DNA from: Octopus sinensis
Taxonomy: Eukaryota
Length of the DNA: 64,000 nucleotides
Direction of reading: 5' to 3'
NCBI RefSeq assembly: GCF_006345805.1
Contig: NW_021834001.1
Coordinates: forward strand, 1-64,000
Shown here piece after piece: positions 5,520 through 17,896 of the stretch (positions are counted from its first letter, which is position 1; every line of letters starts with the position of its first letter). The notes beneath the pieces were generated by a model. The model searched no databases. It saw only the letters and a program-made list of their open reading frames with translations, and had not been told where the DNA came from. The position numbers were made by a program, and so were the translations under genes.

Positions 5520-5912
5520 CTCTCTTTACTCTTTTACTTGTTTCACTCATTTGGCTGCGGCTATGCTGGAGCACCGCCTTTAGCCGAGCAAATCAACCCC
5601 AGGACATATTCTTTGGTAACCCAGTACTTATTCTATCGGTCTCTTTTGCCGAACCGCTAAGTTACGGGACACTAGCACACCAGCATCGGTTGTTAAGCGA
5701 TGTCGTGGGGGAACAAACACAGACACACAAACACACACATAAATATATACATACATATATATACAACGGGCTTCTTTCAGTTTCCGCCTACCAAATCCAC
5801 TCACAAGGCTTTGGTCGGCCCGAGGCTATAGTAGAAGACACTTGCCCACGGTGCCATGCAGTGGGACTGAACCATGTAGTTGGTAAGCAAGCTACTTACC
5901 ACACAGCCACTC
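5520..5912 (-). mobile_element. SINE family A, near full length
   Basis: Reverse complement of the head GAGTGGCTGTGTGGTAAGTAGC, the body and the tail (GCTATGCTGGAGCACCGCC, CTTTTACTTGTTTCA). Confidence 0.92.
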
Positions 5913-6135: not shown

Positions 6136-6200
6136 GAAAAAAGTATGTATATATATATATATAAGAATCTTTTGCATAATAAGATAAAAAAAAACCAAGG

Positions 6201-6242
<42 letters not shown>

Positions 6243-6259
6243 GCATTTATAGATAGAAG

Positions 6260-6311
6260 GTCTTACAGCTGTTTCTAGGATATTAATTAATAATATCCCT
6301 TCATCGGAGAC
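6260..6311 (-). ncRNA. Minimal type-I hammerhead-like motif (U4C variant)
   Basis: Minus strand reads GTCT CCGATGA A GGGATATT attaatt AATATCCT A GAAAC AGCT GTA AGAC: stem I 4 bp, stem II 8 bp, palindromic stem III ACAGCTGT, GUA triplet. Confidence 0.6.
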
Positions 6312-6377
6312 GGTGTGAGAGGAAAAATTAAGTCATAGTCAGTTTCGAAACTATGACTTAATTTTTACTCTTACACC

Positions 6378-6428
6378 GTCTCCAATGAAGGATATTATTA
6401 ATTGATATCCTAGAAACAGCTGTAAGAC
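6378..6428 (+). ncRNA. Minimal type-I hammerhead-like motif (U4C, G5A; probably inactive)
   Basis: GTCT CCAATGA A GGATATT..GATATCCT A GAAAC AGCT GTA AGAC; the inverted copy of 6260-6311. Confidence 0.5.
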
Positions 6429-6444
6429 CTTCTATCTATAAATG

Positions 6445-6480
<36 letters not shown>

Positions 6481-6687
6481 AGAAGGGTAGTAATATTATT
6501 TACTACCAGGTGCCCAGCACAAAAGACGAATTAGTCATAAGACAAAAATATTATTCATATAGAAAAATATTATTCATGTAGTTATACAATTAAGGGCTCC
6601 TAAATAAAGATGCCGAGTGCTGGGAACATAAAAAGGGGATGAATTTATCGAGAGTGAAAATCAAAAACGTTTACCGATAACTTTAAC

Positions 6688-6763
6688 AACTCGTACCGCG
6701 GTTTCTGCTTCTTTCTAGCAAAGCACAGAATATGTTTGCTAAGGCCAGCTTCATCAGCGAGTC
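6688..6763 (-). ncRNA. Type-I hammerhead ribozyme, complete core
   Basis: Reverse-complement copy of 7108-7183 with one substitution in the stem II extension. Confidence 0.8.
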
Positions 6764-7107
6764 GCCTGAATTTAATCGAGGTCTGCAGCGATGTGGGACT
6801 ATATGTTACATCCGACTACTAGCAGATCTTAACTTTTCAAATCTCTGCGCAGACGCAAAATTTACACGGGCATGCCGGGAAGAATTTTACGAATAAATTC
6901 ATCATGTAGTATGCGAATATAAACAAGAAGGGTAGTAATATTATTTACTACCAGGTGCCCAGCACAAAAGACGAATTAGTCATAAGACAAAAATATTATT
7001 CATGTGTAAATTTTGCGTCTGCGCAGAGATTTGAAAAGTTAAGATCTGCTAGTAGTCGGATGTAACATATAGTCCCACATCGCTGCAGACCTCGATTAAA
7101 TTCAGGC

Positions 7108-7183
7108 GACTCGCTGATGAAGCTGGCCTTAGCAAACATATTCTGTGTTTTGCTAGAAAGAAGCAGAAACCGCGGTACGAGTT
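7108..7183 (+). ncRNA. Type-I hammerhead ribozyme, complete core
   Basis: GACTCG (7108-13) CTGATGA (7114-20) A GCT..TTAGCAAA..TTTGCTAG..AGC A GAAA (7166-69) C CGCG GTA (7175-77) CGAGTT. Stem I 6 bp, palindromic stem III ACCGCGGT, predicted cut after 7177. Confidence 0.82.
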
Positions 7184-7376
7184 GTGTAAAGTTATCGGTA
7201 ACGTTTTGATTTTCACTCTCGATAAATTCATCCCCTTTTTATGTTCCCAGCACTCGCATCTTTATTTAGGAGCCCTTAATTGTATAACTACATGAATAAT
7301 ATTTTTGTCTTATGACTAATTCGTCTTTTGTGCTGGGCACCTGGTAGTAAATAATATTACTACCCTTCTTGTTTAT

Positions 7377-7433
<57 letters not shown>

Positions 7434-7606
7434 CCTTAGTTTTTTTTATCTCATTATGCAAAAATTCTTATATACACACACTGACATAGAACAAACGTTG
7501 AACCCTTTATTCGCAATATTACTGAATCTGGAACTTAACTATGGTCTGTCTATAGCACTTATTCAGCATTATCTGATACCTTTGGGTTTCAATGACAACA
7601 TTATCA

Positions 7607-17452: not shown

Positions 17453-17498
<46 letters not shown>

Positions 17499-17501
<3 letters not shown>

Positions 17502-17896
17502 GTTATCGCCATACTAATATGGCATTCTTATAAAAATAAGAATAAAGCTGTCTGCTTATTAGCTCCATGAGGCCATCGCCTTAAGTTAGCTATTTGATAC
17601 ACAAACTGTATCCATATAACCTTCGAACAAGGGAGGTCAGTCGCTTCACACTACTTGACCGGCAGCTACAGACGCGTTTCGGGGTATTGGCCCTTTTCAA
17701 TGCAGCGTAGCCAGCCAGTAGGTGTCGCTTCCGACAATCTCTGTTCGATGGTTTTATTTACCTAGTTTCGGTGGAATACATCCACTTGTTTTCAATAATA
17801 GAAATATTAAAATTACTAAGTCTCTCTAACTATTATTTTCCGGGAACGCTGCCGCTGTTCTCTTTTAGAGAGACTTAGTAATTTTAATATTTCTAT

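What the first reader, a model, noticed from the sequence alone, without database searches (positions are those of the whole stretch)
6479..7371. Foldback element with two complete-core hammerhead ribozymes pointing outward (Penelope/retrozyme-like RNA mobile element)
Seen: 7108-7183 (+) folds as a type-I hammerhead, with stem I GACTCG/CGAGTT, CUGAUGA, an extended stem II, GAAA, a 2-bp stem III closed by the palindrome ACCGCGGT, and GUA at the cut site. Its mirror image lies at 6688-6763 (-). The two ~370-390 bp arms are almost identical (young), there is an 80-bp partial tandem copy (period ~445 bp), no ORF, and the element sits in (TA)n. Known: Penelope-like elements carry minimal type-I hammerheads with palindromic stem III that cleave as dimers and often form tandem or inverted ends; non-LTR retrozymes are small hammerhead-bearing tandem repeats that give circular RNAs (de la Pena lab). 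Inference: this is a recently active, non-autonomous ribozyme retroelement family. Read-through transcription would bury the ribozyme in ~370-bp dsRNA (an ADAR/Dicer substrate), whereas divergent transcription from 7003/7004 would give cleavable RNA.
Basis: partly seen in the sequence, partly recalled or inferred. Interest (0 to 1): 0.88.

Follow-up and report, generated by a model that had tools for sequence, protein, structure and literature searches.

The report
Hammerhead retrozyme inserted head-to-head, Penelope-style
This is a real, young copy of a small non-coding mobile repeat that carries a hammerhead self-cutting RNA motif and was pasted into a (TA)n microsatellite by Penelope-like retrotransposon enzymes: a new family of an already described class ("animal retrozymes"), not a new kind of element.

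Summary
Confirmed. Window 6472-7378 is one small locus of a ~445-nt non-coding repeat family. One full unit plus 87 nt lie on the minus strand. They join head-to-head at 7003/7004 to a 5'-truncated unit on the plus strand. Both 3' ends abut (TA)n.

Each arm carries a Penelope-type minimal type-I hammerhead: CUGAUGA, GAAA, palindromic helix III ACCGCGGU, GUA cut site. The window holds 3 such motifs against 0.005 expected; the genome holds 331 against 0-2 in controls. Sister families keep the searched core motif while helices I and II change by compensatory substitutions. Rfam misses it, and also misses this genome's Penelope hammerheads. The core/helix II junction is A.A, not G10.1-C11.1, so catalysis is unproven.

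All 18 sequenced two-armed loci are head-to-head. Arms of one locus differ by 0.3%, against 2.1% between loci. Inner junctions vary. Outer ends fall at recurrent TA-microhomology sites, one of each kind in 17 of 18 loci. This is the footprint of dual-strand target-primed reverse transcription by Penelope-like elements, which are abundant and intact here.

Verdict: a new member of a known class. The scan has already flagged many sister families on other DNA of this genome. Cleavage, circles and expression remain untested.

The parts
6450..6478 (.). (TA)n on the left side of the insertion; it merges with the TATAT end of the unit.
6472..6916 (-). One full 445-nt repeat unit (unit positions 1-445). 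Its 3' end points left into (TA)n.
   Evidence: BLAST of the unit against the window and 20 other loci. GC is 37.5% (base counts).
6917..7003 (-). Last 87 nt (unit positions 359-445) of the preceding tandem unit. This is the 5'-truncated start of the minus-strand arm.
   Evidence: Direct repeat D4, spacing 445, 96%.
7003..7004 (.). Head-to-head inner junction. The 5' ends of the two arms meet here with no filler.
   Evidence: Other loci have different junction positions and 0-21 nt of filler.
7004..7378 (+). 5'-truncated unit (positions 50-445, lacking one 19-nt internal duplication). Its 3' end points right into (TA)n.
6686..6765 (-). Minimal type-I hammerhead motif of the left arm. TCATCAG at 6751-6757 is CUGAUGA on the minus strand. 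The helix III palindrome is at 6695-6702 and A17 at 6694. The predicted cut is between 6694 and 6693.
7106..7185 (+). Minimal type-I hammerhead motif of the right arm.
- Stem I: 7106-7113 pairs with 7178-7185.
- CUGAUGA: 7114-7120.
- Helix II: 7121-7165.
- GAAA: 7166-7169.
- Palindrome ACCGCGGU: 7169-7176.
- A17: 7177. The predicted cut is 7177|7178.
   Evidence: Unconstrained co-folding of two copies gives the double-hammerhead topology at -58.1 kcal/mol, against 2 x -22.1 for monomers.
7365..7378 (+). CTTCTTGTTTATAT, the principal 3' end and presumed reverse-transcription start site of the family. Its mirror lies at 6472-6485 on the minus strand.
   Evidence: At least one arm ends at this motif (some a few bases further into the next unit) in each of 18 sequenced two-armed loci.
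7280..7290 (+). TTGTATAACTA, the family's second recurrent 3'-end site (unit positions ~331-342). It is not used at this locus. Its mirror lies at 6580-6590 on the minus strand.
   Evidence: It is the outer end of the other arm in 13 of 18 loci.
7379..7430 (.). (TA)n on the right side of the insertion.

Best explanation
The stretch is one insertion of a ~445-nt non-coding, hammerhead-bearing tandem retroelement. In the literature's terms it is an animal 'non-LTR retrozyme', that is, a non-autonomous parasite of Penelope-like elements (PLEs).

Proposed mechanism:
1. A source array is transcribed into a longer-than-unit RNA.
2. A PLE reverse transcriptase/GIY-YIG endonuclease complex cuts both strands of a (TA)n microsatellite.
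3. Each 3'-OH primes cDNA synthesis on the RNA, at UAUA-containing sites downstream of the hammerhead.
4. The two cDNAs grow towards each other and are joined at an arbitrary point.

The product is two arms with their 3' ends outward in (TA)n, their 5'-truncated ends meeting in the middle, and their hammerheads 'pointing outward'.

Shown here: the anatomy, the polarity rule, the recurrent ends, the single-event origin of both arms, conservation of the hammerhead helices by compensatory change, and the presence of intact PLEs that end in (TA)n.

Inferred: the RNA intermediate, which PLE supplies the enzymes, and any role of the hammerhead. It may self-cleave as a dimer through the 8-nt palindromic helix III, or serve mainly as part of the protein-recognition module. 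This locus is probably a dead-on-arrival copy, because it has one hammerhead per strand.
For: **1. Family size.** The genome holds at least 184 BLAST matches from 867 first-look candidates. They form ~445-bp-period arrays on more than 20 chromosome-scale contigs. The hammerhead pattern matches exactly 331 times, against 0 and 2 for the reversed control.

**2. Polarity.** All 18 two-armed loci held as sequence have minus copies on the left and plus copies on the right. For 16 of 16 the chance probability is 1.5e-5.

**3. Junctions and ends.** Inner junctions fall at different unit positions in every locus, with 0-21 nt of filler. Outer ends always abut (TA)n, at TATA microhomology.

**4. Target.** (TA)n also lies on the 5' side of the single-arm loci L040 and L048. 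So (TA)n is the target, not just a 3' tail.

**5. One event per locus.** Units differ by 0.23% within an arm, 0.33% between the two arms of a locus, and 2.1% between loci.

**6. Two kinds of end.** In 17 of 18 loci exactly one arm ends at CTTCTTGTTTATAT. The other ends upstream, mostly at TTGTATA(ACTA). For 15 of 16, P is about 2.5e-4. This matches the two internal RT start sites ('tail') and the cutting and extension of both strands shown in vitro for a PLE (PMC11167929).

**7. Hammerhead under selection.** Homologous families A, B, C and D keep the core and helix III. The pattern search required these, so their conservation across families is not an independent result.
- Stem I changes from GACUCG/CGAGUU to UCCUG/CAGGA, UCUUG/CAAGA or UCCCA/UGGGA.
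- The helix II base changes from GCU/AGC to UCU/AGA or AACU/AGUU.
- The distal hairpin changes from UAGCAAA/UUUGCUA to CAGCAAA/UUUGCUG.
- In the 86 aligned units, which were not selected by pattern, the core positions that vary noticeably are N7 and H17, the two positions the hammerhead consensus leaves free. C3, U4 and A13 vary in under 5% of units.

**8. Intact autonomous PLEs are present.** The GIY-YIG search gave 5029 candidates and many 781-aa open frames. Locus L058 has RVT_1 plus a C-terminal GIY-YIG domain. Its 3' UTR carries a U3-A8 minimal hammerhead with palindrome ACAUGU, and the copy ends ...CTTCTTTTTTACAAATAT(AT)n.

**9. Literature.** Tandem copies plus an inverted 5'-truncated copy, and a microsatellite/(TA)n bias, are PLE hallmarks (PMC8557442). 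Retrozymes are tandem 150-450-bp, low-GC repeats with type-I hammerheads (PMC7229834) and are related to PLE pLTRs (bioRxiv 10.64898/2026.07.22.740005).
Against: - No RNA evidence. No run holding the repeat is on record as RNA, and only assembled contigs could be laid, so neither ends at the cut site nor circles can be seen.
- No Rfam hammerhead model matches, even at E <= 10 on 101 nt. The same models also miss the hammerheads next to PLE ORFs in L054, L058 and L059, so this says little.
- The core/helix II junction is A.A (U.U or U.C in family C). The PLE minimal hammerhead consensus has G10.1-C11.1 plus one extra nucleotide (PMC4209133). Activity could be low or nil.
- Arrays of up to 15.7 units imply that the template RNAs were not cleaved, or that the template was circular.
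- No sequence similarity was found between the unit and the pLTR of the PLE copies in hand, so the partner is not identified.
- No empty-site allele was examined.
Confidence: 0.8

Rival explanations
1. The template is a circular RNA. A unit-length circle, made by hammerhead cleavage plus ligation, is reverse-transcribed by rolling circle from both target strands. That would produce the arrays. It would also explain why the two arms use two different start sites, because a monomeric circle has only one copy of each site.
For: - The one-of-each rule holds in 17 of 18 loci.
- Units within a locus are almost identical in both arms.
- The monomer folds with its 5' and 3' ends paired in stem I, z = -2.2.
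- A rolling-circle model has been proposed for PLEs and retrozymes (PMC4209133; abstract).
Against: - The 5' truncation point of the arm that ends at position 445 tends to lie near the other arm's start site. The mean circular distance is 77.5 nt against 111 expected, P about 0.02. Classical twin priming on one linear multimer predicts this; a circle does not.
- In vitro, a PLE uses unprocessed RNA, and hammerhead mutants insert normally.
- No circular RNA evidence was obtained.
- The window locus has both ends at the same site.
Confidence: 0.2
2. The arrays are not a separate non-autonomous family. They are multimerised pseudo-LTRs, the terminal non-coding part, of a specific autonomous PLE whose ORF-bearing copies were not sampled.
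For: - PLE hammerheads lie in pLTRs, and retrozymes are sister to pLTRs in Xenopus.
- Hammerheads with the same ACCGCGGU palindrome but an unrelated helix II exist at C2:207905638 and C3:79718981. They could belong to such a PLE.
- Only 40 of 867 candidates were scored.
Against: - Every match listed lies in arrays of ~445-bp period. None is spaced by an ORF-sized gap.
- No ORF lies in or beside the 20 loci examined.
- BLAST of the unit against 12 PLE loci gives only chance hits.
Confidence: 0.08
3. The element is a DNA-level satellite or foldback with no RNA intermediate. On this view the 445-bp satellite spreads and inverts through replication errors or palindrome formation at fragile (TA)n tracts, or as a foldback/TIR DNA transposon. 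The hammerhead-like motif would be a relic.
For: - (TA)n tracts are prone to hairpins and rearrangement.
- Long inverted repeats made of tandem units recall Drosophila Foldback elements (own knowledge).
- No RNA evidence was obtained.
Against: - Polarity is strict: the 3' end, as defined by the hammerhead, is always outward in 18 of 18 loci.
- The arms are asymmetric, for example 2.7 against 15.7 copies, and the inner junctions are not palindromic.
- Termini are not fixed, but fall at a few microhomology sites.
- Loci are dispersed on many chromosomes, and each is internally homogeneous.
- Compensatory changes maintain the RNA helices.
Confidence: 0.06
4. The hammerhead motif is retained but does not self-cleave. 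It serves as part of the structured RNA module that the PLE protein recognises, or it is protein-assisted only. This rivals the ribozyme part of the main explanation, not the retroelement part.
For: - A.A replaces G10.1-C11.1.
- Long uncleaved multimers were evidently copied.
- PLE minimal hammerheads cleave poorly in vitro.
- The anole PLE hammerhead cleaves only with protein and is dispensable for insertion.
- Eight of nine Xenopus retrozyme dimers did not cleave.
Against: - In the 86 aligned units, which were not selected by pattern, the core positions that vary noticeably are N7 and H17, the ones catalysis tolerates.
- The helix III palindrome and all three helices are maintained across the families found with the core pattern.
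- The dimer co-fold gives a textbook double hammerhead.
Confidence: 0.4

Closest known systems
Metazoan non-LTR retrozymes (Cervera and de la Pena 2020, PMC7229834; Li, Clavereau and Pollet 2026 preprint)
   Same: - Non-coding tandem repeats of 150-450 bp with low GC (37.5% here).
- One type-I hammerhead per unit.
- Coexistence with PLEs.
- Dimer-dependent hammerhead architecture, as in amphibians.
   Different: - The hammerhead is of the PLE 'minimal' type, with no loop-loop tertiary contacts evident and a 45-nt helix II, not the canonical invertebrate type.
- A.A sits at 10.1/11.1.
- Expression and circular RNA are untested here.
- No paper in the searched library describes retrozymes in cephalopods.
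Minimal hammerheads of Penelope-like elements (Cervera and de la Pena 2014, PMC4209133)
   Same: - The CUGANGA and GAAA boxes.
- A long helix II.
- An extra nucleotide after A9.
- A palindromic helix III with no real loop.
- Occurrence of pairs on opposite strands 100-700 bp apart.
   Different: - An extra A also precedes G12, so G10.1-C11.1 is not adjacent to the core. Family C has U.U or U.C at this position.
- Stem I is longer (8 bp) than the 4-5 bp described.
PLE insertion architecture and mechanism (Craig et al. 2021, PMC8557442; Frangieh et al. 2024, PMC11167929)
   Same: - Partial tandems plus an inverted 5'-truncated copy at the 5' end.
- AT-rich or (TA)n targets.
- Both DNA strands used as primers.
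- Two alternative internal RT start sites, giving an optional 'tail'.
- Unprocessed multimeric RNA as the template.
   Different: - There is no ORF; the element is non-autonomous.
- The 'tail' between the two start sites is about 105-111 nt, not 30-40 nt.
- The start sites share TA microhomology with the target. In the anole PLE they are not homologous to it.
- The two arms of one insertion almost always use different sites. The in vitro work saw no strand difference.
Twin priming of human L1
   Same: One arm starts at the canonical 3' site and the inverted arm starts at an internal microhomology site of the same RNA. The 5' end of the first arm tends to lie near the second arm's start site (P about 0.02).
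   Different: The enzymes differ (GIY-YIG/telomerase-like RT), the template is multimeric, and inversion is the rule rather than the exception.
Drosophila Foldback (FB) elements and TIR DNA transposons (own knowledge)
   Same: Long inverted arms built of tandem repeats, which fold back.
   Different: There are no fixed termini, no recognisable target-site duplication and no transposase. The arms are asymmetric with variable junctions. The polarity is that of reverse transcription.

Membership tests
Animal non-LTR retrozyme | Non-coding tandem repeat unit of about 150-450 bp with low GC | tested here: met
   The period is 445 bp in 20 loci, with up to 15.7 copies per arm. GC is 37.5%. There is no ORF of 100 aa or more.
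Animal non-LTR retrozyme | One type-I hammerhead per unit | tested here: met
   The motif is present in each full unit. The genome holds 331 exact matches against 0-2 in the control. The window holds 3 against 0.005 expected. Caveat: A.A at 10.1/11.1.
Animal non-LTR retrozyme | Transcribed, and accumulates as linear and circular unit-length RNA | tested here: inconclusive
   No holder run is on record as RNA, and only contigs could be laid. One contig rich in A>G changes hints at edited RNA but is weak.
Animal non-LTR retrozyme | Self-cleavage of the hammerhead, as monomer or dimer | not testable with these tools
   Only a thermodynamic prediction is available: the dimer co-fold adopts the double-hammerhead topology.
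PLE-type minimal hammerhead | Conserved CUGANGA and GAAA boxes with helices I and II maintained by covariation | tested here: met
   Families A to D show compensatory changes in helix I, the helix II base and the distal hairpin. Conservation of the core between families was partly imposed by the pattern search. In the 86 aligned units, which were not selected by pattern, N7 and H17 vary noticeably and C3, U4 and A13 vary in under 5% of units.
PLE-type minimal hammerhead | Palindromic positions 15.2-16.2 / loop 3 (helix III formed by a dimer) | tested here: met
   ACCGCGGU is an 8-nt palindrome. The co-fold forms it between molecules.
PLE-type minimal hammerhead | One extra nucleotide between A9 and 10.1, with a G10.1-C11.1 pair adjacent to the core | tested here: inconclusive
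   The extra A after A9 is present and a G-C pair follows. But a second extra A lies between C and G12, giving A.A. Family C has U.U or U.C and family E has A-U.
Penelope-like element (autonomous) | ORF with a telomerase-like RT and a GIY-YIG endonuclease | tested here: not met
   No ORF lies in the unit or in the arrays. The element is therefore not a PLE itself, but it behaves as a PLE-dependent passenger.
PLE-made insertion (footprint) | Tandem copies plus an inverted 5'-truncated copy, an AT-rich/microsatellite target, and alternative internal RT start sites | tested here: met
   compared with the descriptions.
Rfam Hammerhead_1 and other Rfam hammerhead models | Score at or above the gathering threshold | tested here: not met
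   No hit appears at the gathering threshold, nor at E <= 10. The models also miss the hammerheads in the PLE-containing loci L054, L058 and L059. The test is therefore uninformative for this subtype.
TIR / foldback DNA transposon | Fixed terminal sequences, target-site duplication, and symmetric arms | tested here: not met
   Outer ends fall at several unit positions. Inner junctions and arm lengths differ at every locus.

The most novel reading that the evidence does not exclude
The genomic scars of this family record a mechanistic rule of Penelope-type integration that has not been reported. Both target strands are extended in a single event, from one long uncleaved multimeric RNA. The two strands use two different initiation sites, one per protomer of a dimeric RNP: position 441-445 in one arm and about 334-342 in the other. 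The first arm stops near where the second began. In addition, the CUGAUGA-A...A-GAAA junction (A.A at 10.1/11.1), shared by several octopus families, would be a functional core variant of the hammerhead.
Probability: 0.3. Interest if true: 0.6.

Novelty: new member of a known kind. Interest (0 to 1): 0.4.

Why it matters
The class is known, so the find does not change the picture of ribozyme-bearing retroelements.

Its value is as clean natural data on how Penelope-like enzymes integrate. The family consists of dozens of very young, internally homogeneous insertions. They show strict head-to-head polarity, (TA)n targets and two recurrent start sites, used one per arm. That supports, in vivo and in a mollusc, what has so far been shown in vitro for one lizard element: both strands cut and extended, internal initiation, and an unprocessed multimeric template.

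It also adds cephalopods to the hosts of retrozymes. The searched literature, including a 2026 repeat annotation of Octopus vulgaris, does not mention them.

Head-to-head arms give long perfect hairpins if transcribed. This is relevant in an animal lineage known for heavy A-to-I editing, a point from my own knowledge that was not tested here.

Tried and rejected
- **Rfam scans** at gathering and at E <= 10 found no hammerhead. The MIR8007 hit (77 bits against a gathering score of 195) is only the hairpin made by the inverted junction. I rejected this as evidence against the motif, because Rfam also misses the PLE hammerheads of L054, L058 and L059.
- **Single-molecule minimum-energy folding** does not give the hammerhead, z = -0.7. 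This is expected for a dimer-dependent motif.
- **RNA evidence.** The look-up of sequencing runs returned only runs guessed to be RNA and kept as contigs. Read laying showed no ends and no joints.
- **Partner identification.** So the partner PLE could not be identified, and covariation had to be read from the printed pattern matches rather than from a computed alignment.
- **BLAST of the unit against 12 PLE loci** gave only chance hits.
- **Substitution spectrum between loci.** T>C occurs 19 times and A>G 8 times in unit sense. This is not significant and its polarity is uncertain, so I did not use it.
- **A recurrent 5' end at unit positions 48-50.** Two of the four cases turned out to be the point where subfamily B diverges from the consensus. 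I dropped it as evidence for a transcription start.
- **The 238-nt contig without a hammerhead** from run X16. Its junction is absent from this genome with up to 2 mismatches, so I left it as an aside.
- **A bacterial-type promoter/terminator scan** was not run, because it is not meaningful here.
Full report
**Observation**

Reading the window and the repeat finder confirm the layout.
- 6472-6916 on the minus strand is one complete unit of 445 nt.
- 6917-7003 repeats its last 87 nt (direct repeat, spacing 445).
- 7004-7378 on the plus strand is the same unit lacking its first 49 nt.

Aligned to each other, the arms differ by 2 substitutions, four 1-nt indels and one 19-nt slippage deletion. 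They share variants that the family consensus lacks. So 'almost identical' is right. The longest ORF inside is 60 aa. (TA)n runs lie on both sides.

**The hammerhead motif**

Each arm reads as follows:
- an 8-bp stem I (GCGACUCG/CGAGUUGU);
- CUGAUGA;
- a 45-nt helix II, made of a 3-bp base, an internal loop and the 7-bp hairpin UAGCAAA/UUUGCUA;
- GAAA;
- the 8-nt palindrome ACCGCGGU;
- A17.

The cuts are predicted at 7177|7178 and 6694|6693.

A descriptor requiring the core, a palindromic helix III, at least 4 stem I pairs and a helix II base finds 3 motifs in the window. Two are here and one is at about 17.7 kb. The expectation from 200 dinucleotide shuffles is 0.005.

Genome-wide, the pattern CTGANGA-N25-60-GAAACCGCGGTH matches 331 times, against 0 and 2 for the reversed control.

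Rfam finds no hammerhead at any threshold. It also misses the hammerheads in the PLE-containing loci L054, L058 and L059. So Rfam is blind to this helix-III-less subtype.

The monomer minimum-energy fold is not the hammerhead. Unconstrained co-folding of two copies gives the classical double hammerhead: helix III formed by the two palindromes, and stems I formed in trans. Its energy is -58.1 kcal/mol against 2 x -22.1.

One real departure is the base of helix II. Where the PLE minimal hammerhead consensus has one extra nucleotide and then G10.1-C11.1 (PMC4209133), this motif has an A on both sides (A.A).

**Selection on the RNA structure**

Pattern searches printed homologous sister families. 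They share the GGCC...GCU core of helix II.

| Feature | Family A (window) | Family B | Family C | Family D |
|---|---|---|---|---|
| Stem I | GACUCG/CGAGUU | same as A | UCCUG/CAGGA or UCUUG/CAAGA | UCCCA/UGGGA |
| Helix II base | GCU/AGC | same as A | UCU/AGA | AACU/AGUU |
| Distal hairpin | UAGCAAA/UUUGCUA | same as A | not compared | CAGCAAA/UUUGCUG |
| N7, H17 | U, A | C, U | U, A | A, C |

These are compensatory changes in all the helices that can be formed in cis. Conservation of the core between families was imposed by the pattern. But among 86 aligned units not selected by pattern, the core positions that vary noticeably are N7 and H17, and C3, U4 and A13 vary in under 5% of units. 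One-sided stem changes preserve pairing (G.U to A-U, C-G to U.G).

The non-Watson-Crick 10.1/11.1 position persists (A.A, U.U, U.C). It is A-U in another family.

**Family and locus architecture**

The 375-nt arm finds at least 184 matches from 867 first-look candidates on more than 20 chromosome-scale contigs. Nearly all are in arrays of ~445-bp period.

In 20 fetched loci plus two more, four rules hold.

1. Every two-armed locus (18 of 18) has minus copies on the left and plus copies on the right. The 3' ends are outward and the 5' ends meet in the middle. For 16 of 16 the chance probability is 1.5e-5.
2. Inner junctions lie at a different unit position in every locus, with 0-21 nt of filler. 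Arms are unequal, for example 2.7 against 15.7 copies.
3. Outer ends always run into (TA)n, at unit positions that contain TATA. (TA)n also flanks the 5' side of the single-arm loci L040 and L048. So (TA)n is the target.
4. Units differ by 0.23% within an arm, 0.33% between the two arms of a locus, and 2.1% between loci. Each locus, both arms included, therefore comes from one template in one recent event.

**A regularity in the ends**

In 17 of 18 loci exactly one arm ends at ...CTTCTTGTTTATAT, sometimes running 4-7 nt into the next unit. The other arm ends upstream:
- 13 times at ...TTAATTGTATA(ACTA), unit positions about 334-342;
- otherwise at positions 287, 310, 49 or 57.

For 15 of 16, P is about 2.5e-4. 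The window locus is the one exception, with both ends at position 445. Coordinates suggest that about six further loci obey the rule.

The 5' truncation point of the arm ending at 445 tends to lie near position 338. The mean circular distance is 77.5 nt against 111 expected, P about 0.02. Twin priming on a single linear RNA predicts exactly this. I treat the second result as suggestive only.

**Enzymes available**

- A GIY-YIG search gives 5029 first-look candidates and dozens of identical-scoring copies with 781-aa open frames.
- Locus L058 carries RVT_1 plus a C-terminal GIY-YIG domain, which makes it a canonical PLE.
- About 570 nt past its stop codon lies a minimal hammerhead with the U3-A8 core covariation (UUGAUAA-GGUUC...GAACC-GAAACAUGUA).
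- The copy ends ...CTTCTTTTTTACAAATAT(AT)n about 65 nt downstream of the predicted cut.
- PLE fragments in L054 and L059 are likewise bounded by (TA)n. L059 contains another small head-to-head hammerhead pair, with palindrome ACGAUCGU, between two (TA)n runs.
- The unit shows no significant similarity to these PLE copies. The partner is therefore unidentified.

**Comparison with the literature**

- Tandem copies, an adjacent inverted 5'-truncated copy, and a microsatellite bias including (TA)n are described hallmarks of PLE insertions (PMC8557442).
- A purified anole PLE cuts and extends both DNA strands and prefers AT-rich DNA. It starts reverse transcription at two internal RNA sites, whose spacing explains the genomic 'tail'. 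It uses unprocessed multimeric RNA, and its hammerhead is protein-assisted and dispensable for insertion (PMC11167929).
- Animal non-LTR retrozymes are tandem 150-450-bp, low-GC repeats with type-I hammerheads, expressed as linear and circular RNA (PMC7229834).
- Retrozymes are argued to be non-autonomous derivatives of PLE pLTRs. Eight of nine Xenopus dimers did not cleave in vitro.

This element fits all of these. It differs in four ways: the A.A junction, a tail of about 105-111 nt, start sites that share TA microhomology with the target, and the one-site-per-arm rule.

No paper in the searched library describes retrozymes or hammerheads in cephalopods. A 2026 repeat annotation of Octopus vulgaris lists Penelope-like families but mentions no hammerhead or retrozyme.

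Other notes from this scan call the genome an octopus. I did not verify the species.

**RNA evidence**

This is weak. No run holding the repeat is on record as RNA, and all are kept as contigs. Laying four of them gave coverage by pieces that are 95-100% alike from three organism labels. It showed no ends and no joints.

One low-depth contig of run X10 differs from the window mainly by A>G changes on the plus strand. At least 10 are listed between 6727 and 6818. That strand is antisense to the unit. This looks like ADAR hyperediting of double-stranded RNA. It is a single contig at depth 2.4 from a run only guessed to be RNA, so it is a lead, not a finding.

**Verdict**

The element is a young, non-autonomous, hammerhead-bearing tandem retroelement, inserted into (TA)n by dual-strand target-primed reverse transcription of the Penelope type (confidence 0.8). 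Whether the hammerhead cleaves (about even odds), whether circles form, and which PLE is the partner all remain open.

This particular locus has one hammerhead per strand. It is most likely a dead-on-arrival copy. If transcribed through, it would form a hairpin of about 370 bp.

It is a new member of a known class. This scan has already reported sister families in the same genome, with units of 349-505 nt and the same reading. Those are unchecked AI notes and I did not use them as evidence.

Interest is moderate. It rests mainly on the clean in vivo footprints of PLE integration.

Noticed in passing
window 6239-6449: A separate ~210-bp near-perfect palindrome sits in the same (TA)n tract: arms 6210-6298 and 6390-6478 at 98%, inner arms at 93%.
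- It looks like another head-to-head pair of 5'-truncated copies of a much more abundant family. Contig depth is 10-50x that of the 445-nt unit.
- Other copies continue past the centre at 6344/6348.
- Each arm carries a hammerhead-like motif with a degenerate core here: CCGAUGA or CCAAUGA, the GGAUAU/AUAUCC hairpin, GAAA, and the palindrome ACAGCUGU. One contig from another copy reads CUGAUGA.
   Followed up: partly
window ~17497-17890 (-): A second small hammerhead element lies between two (TA)n runs. It has the U3-A8 core variant (GCUGCA-UUGAAAA-GGG...CCCC-GAAACGCGUC-UGUAGC), a 6-bp stem I and the palindrome ACGCGU. At its 5' end there is a 28-nt inverted stub.
   Followed up: partly
window 6144-6205 and 7430-7480: A ~50-nt inverted repeat (AAGAAT..AAAAAACCAAGGCTG / CAGCCTTAGTTTTTT..ATTCTT, about 90%) brackets the whole (TA)n block that holds both insertions. 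Its nature is unknown.
   Followed up: no
window 6635-6850, run X10, record 15: One 229-nt contig at depth 2.4 differs from the window by 26 letters. At least 10 of the listed differences are A>G on the plus strand, which is antisense to the unit. The cluster looks like ADAR hyperediting. The run is only guessed to be RNA.
   Followed up: partly
run X16 (organism C), record 17; unit positions 104|312: A 238-nt contig at depth 49 joins unit position 104 to position 312. It would be a circularly permuted 238-nt repeat lacking the hammerhead. The junction is absent from this genome with up to 2 mismatches.
   Followed up: partly
L058:1-2477 (G000:C6:82398301-82400777): A canonical Penelope-like element: RVT_1 plus a C-terminal GIY-YIG domain. 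It has a U3-A8 minimal hammerhead at 2362-2405 and its 3' end lies in (TA)8 at 2462. Many genome copies have 781-aa open frames.
   Followed up: partly
L059:~751-1250 (G000:C6:110417818-110418317): Another family shows the same architecture. Two outward-pointing hammerheads (CUGAUGA...GAAACGAUCGUA, A.C at 10.1/11.1) lie about 35 nt apart. The arms are unequal and the element is bounded by (TA)n on both sides.
   Followed up: partly
G000:C4:97362260 and C6:18152164: Canonical-looking type-I hammerheads also exist in this genome: CUGAUGAGAAC...GUUCGAAAC, stem I AUUACA/UGUAAU, and a 1-bp helix III with a tetraloop, as in amphibian satellites.
   Followed up: no
window 5760-5900 and L032 flank: The same SINE-like repeat (GGGCTTCTTTCAGTTTCCG..CCAAATCCAC..GGCCCGAGGCTATAGTAGAAGACACTTGCCC) flanks this locus and the C29 array. 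It is an abundant interspersed repeat, unrelated to the finding.
   Followed up: no
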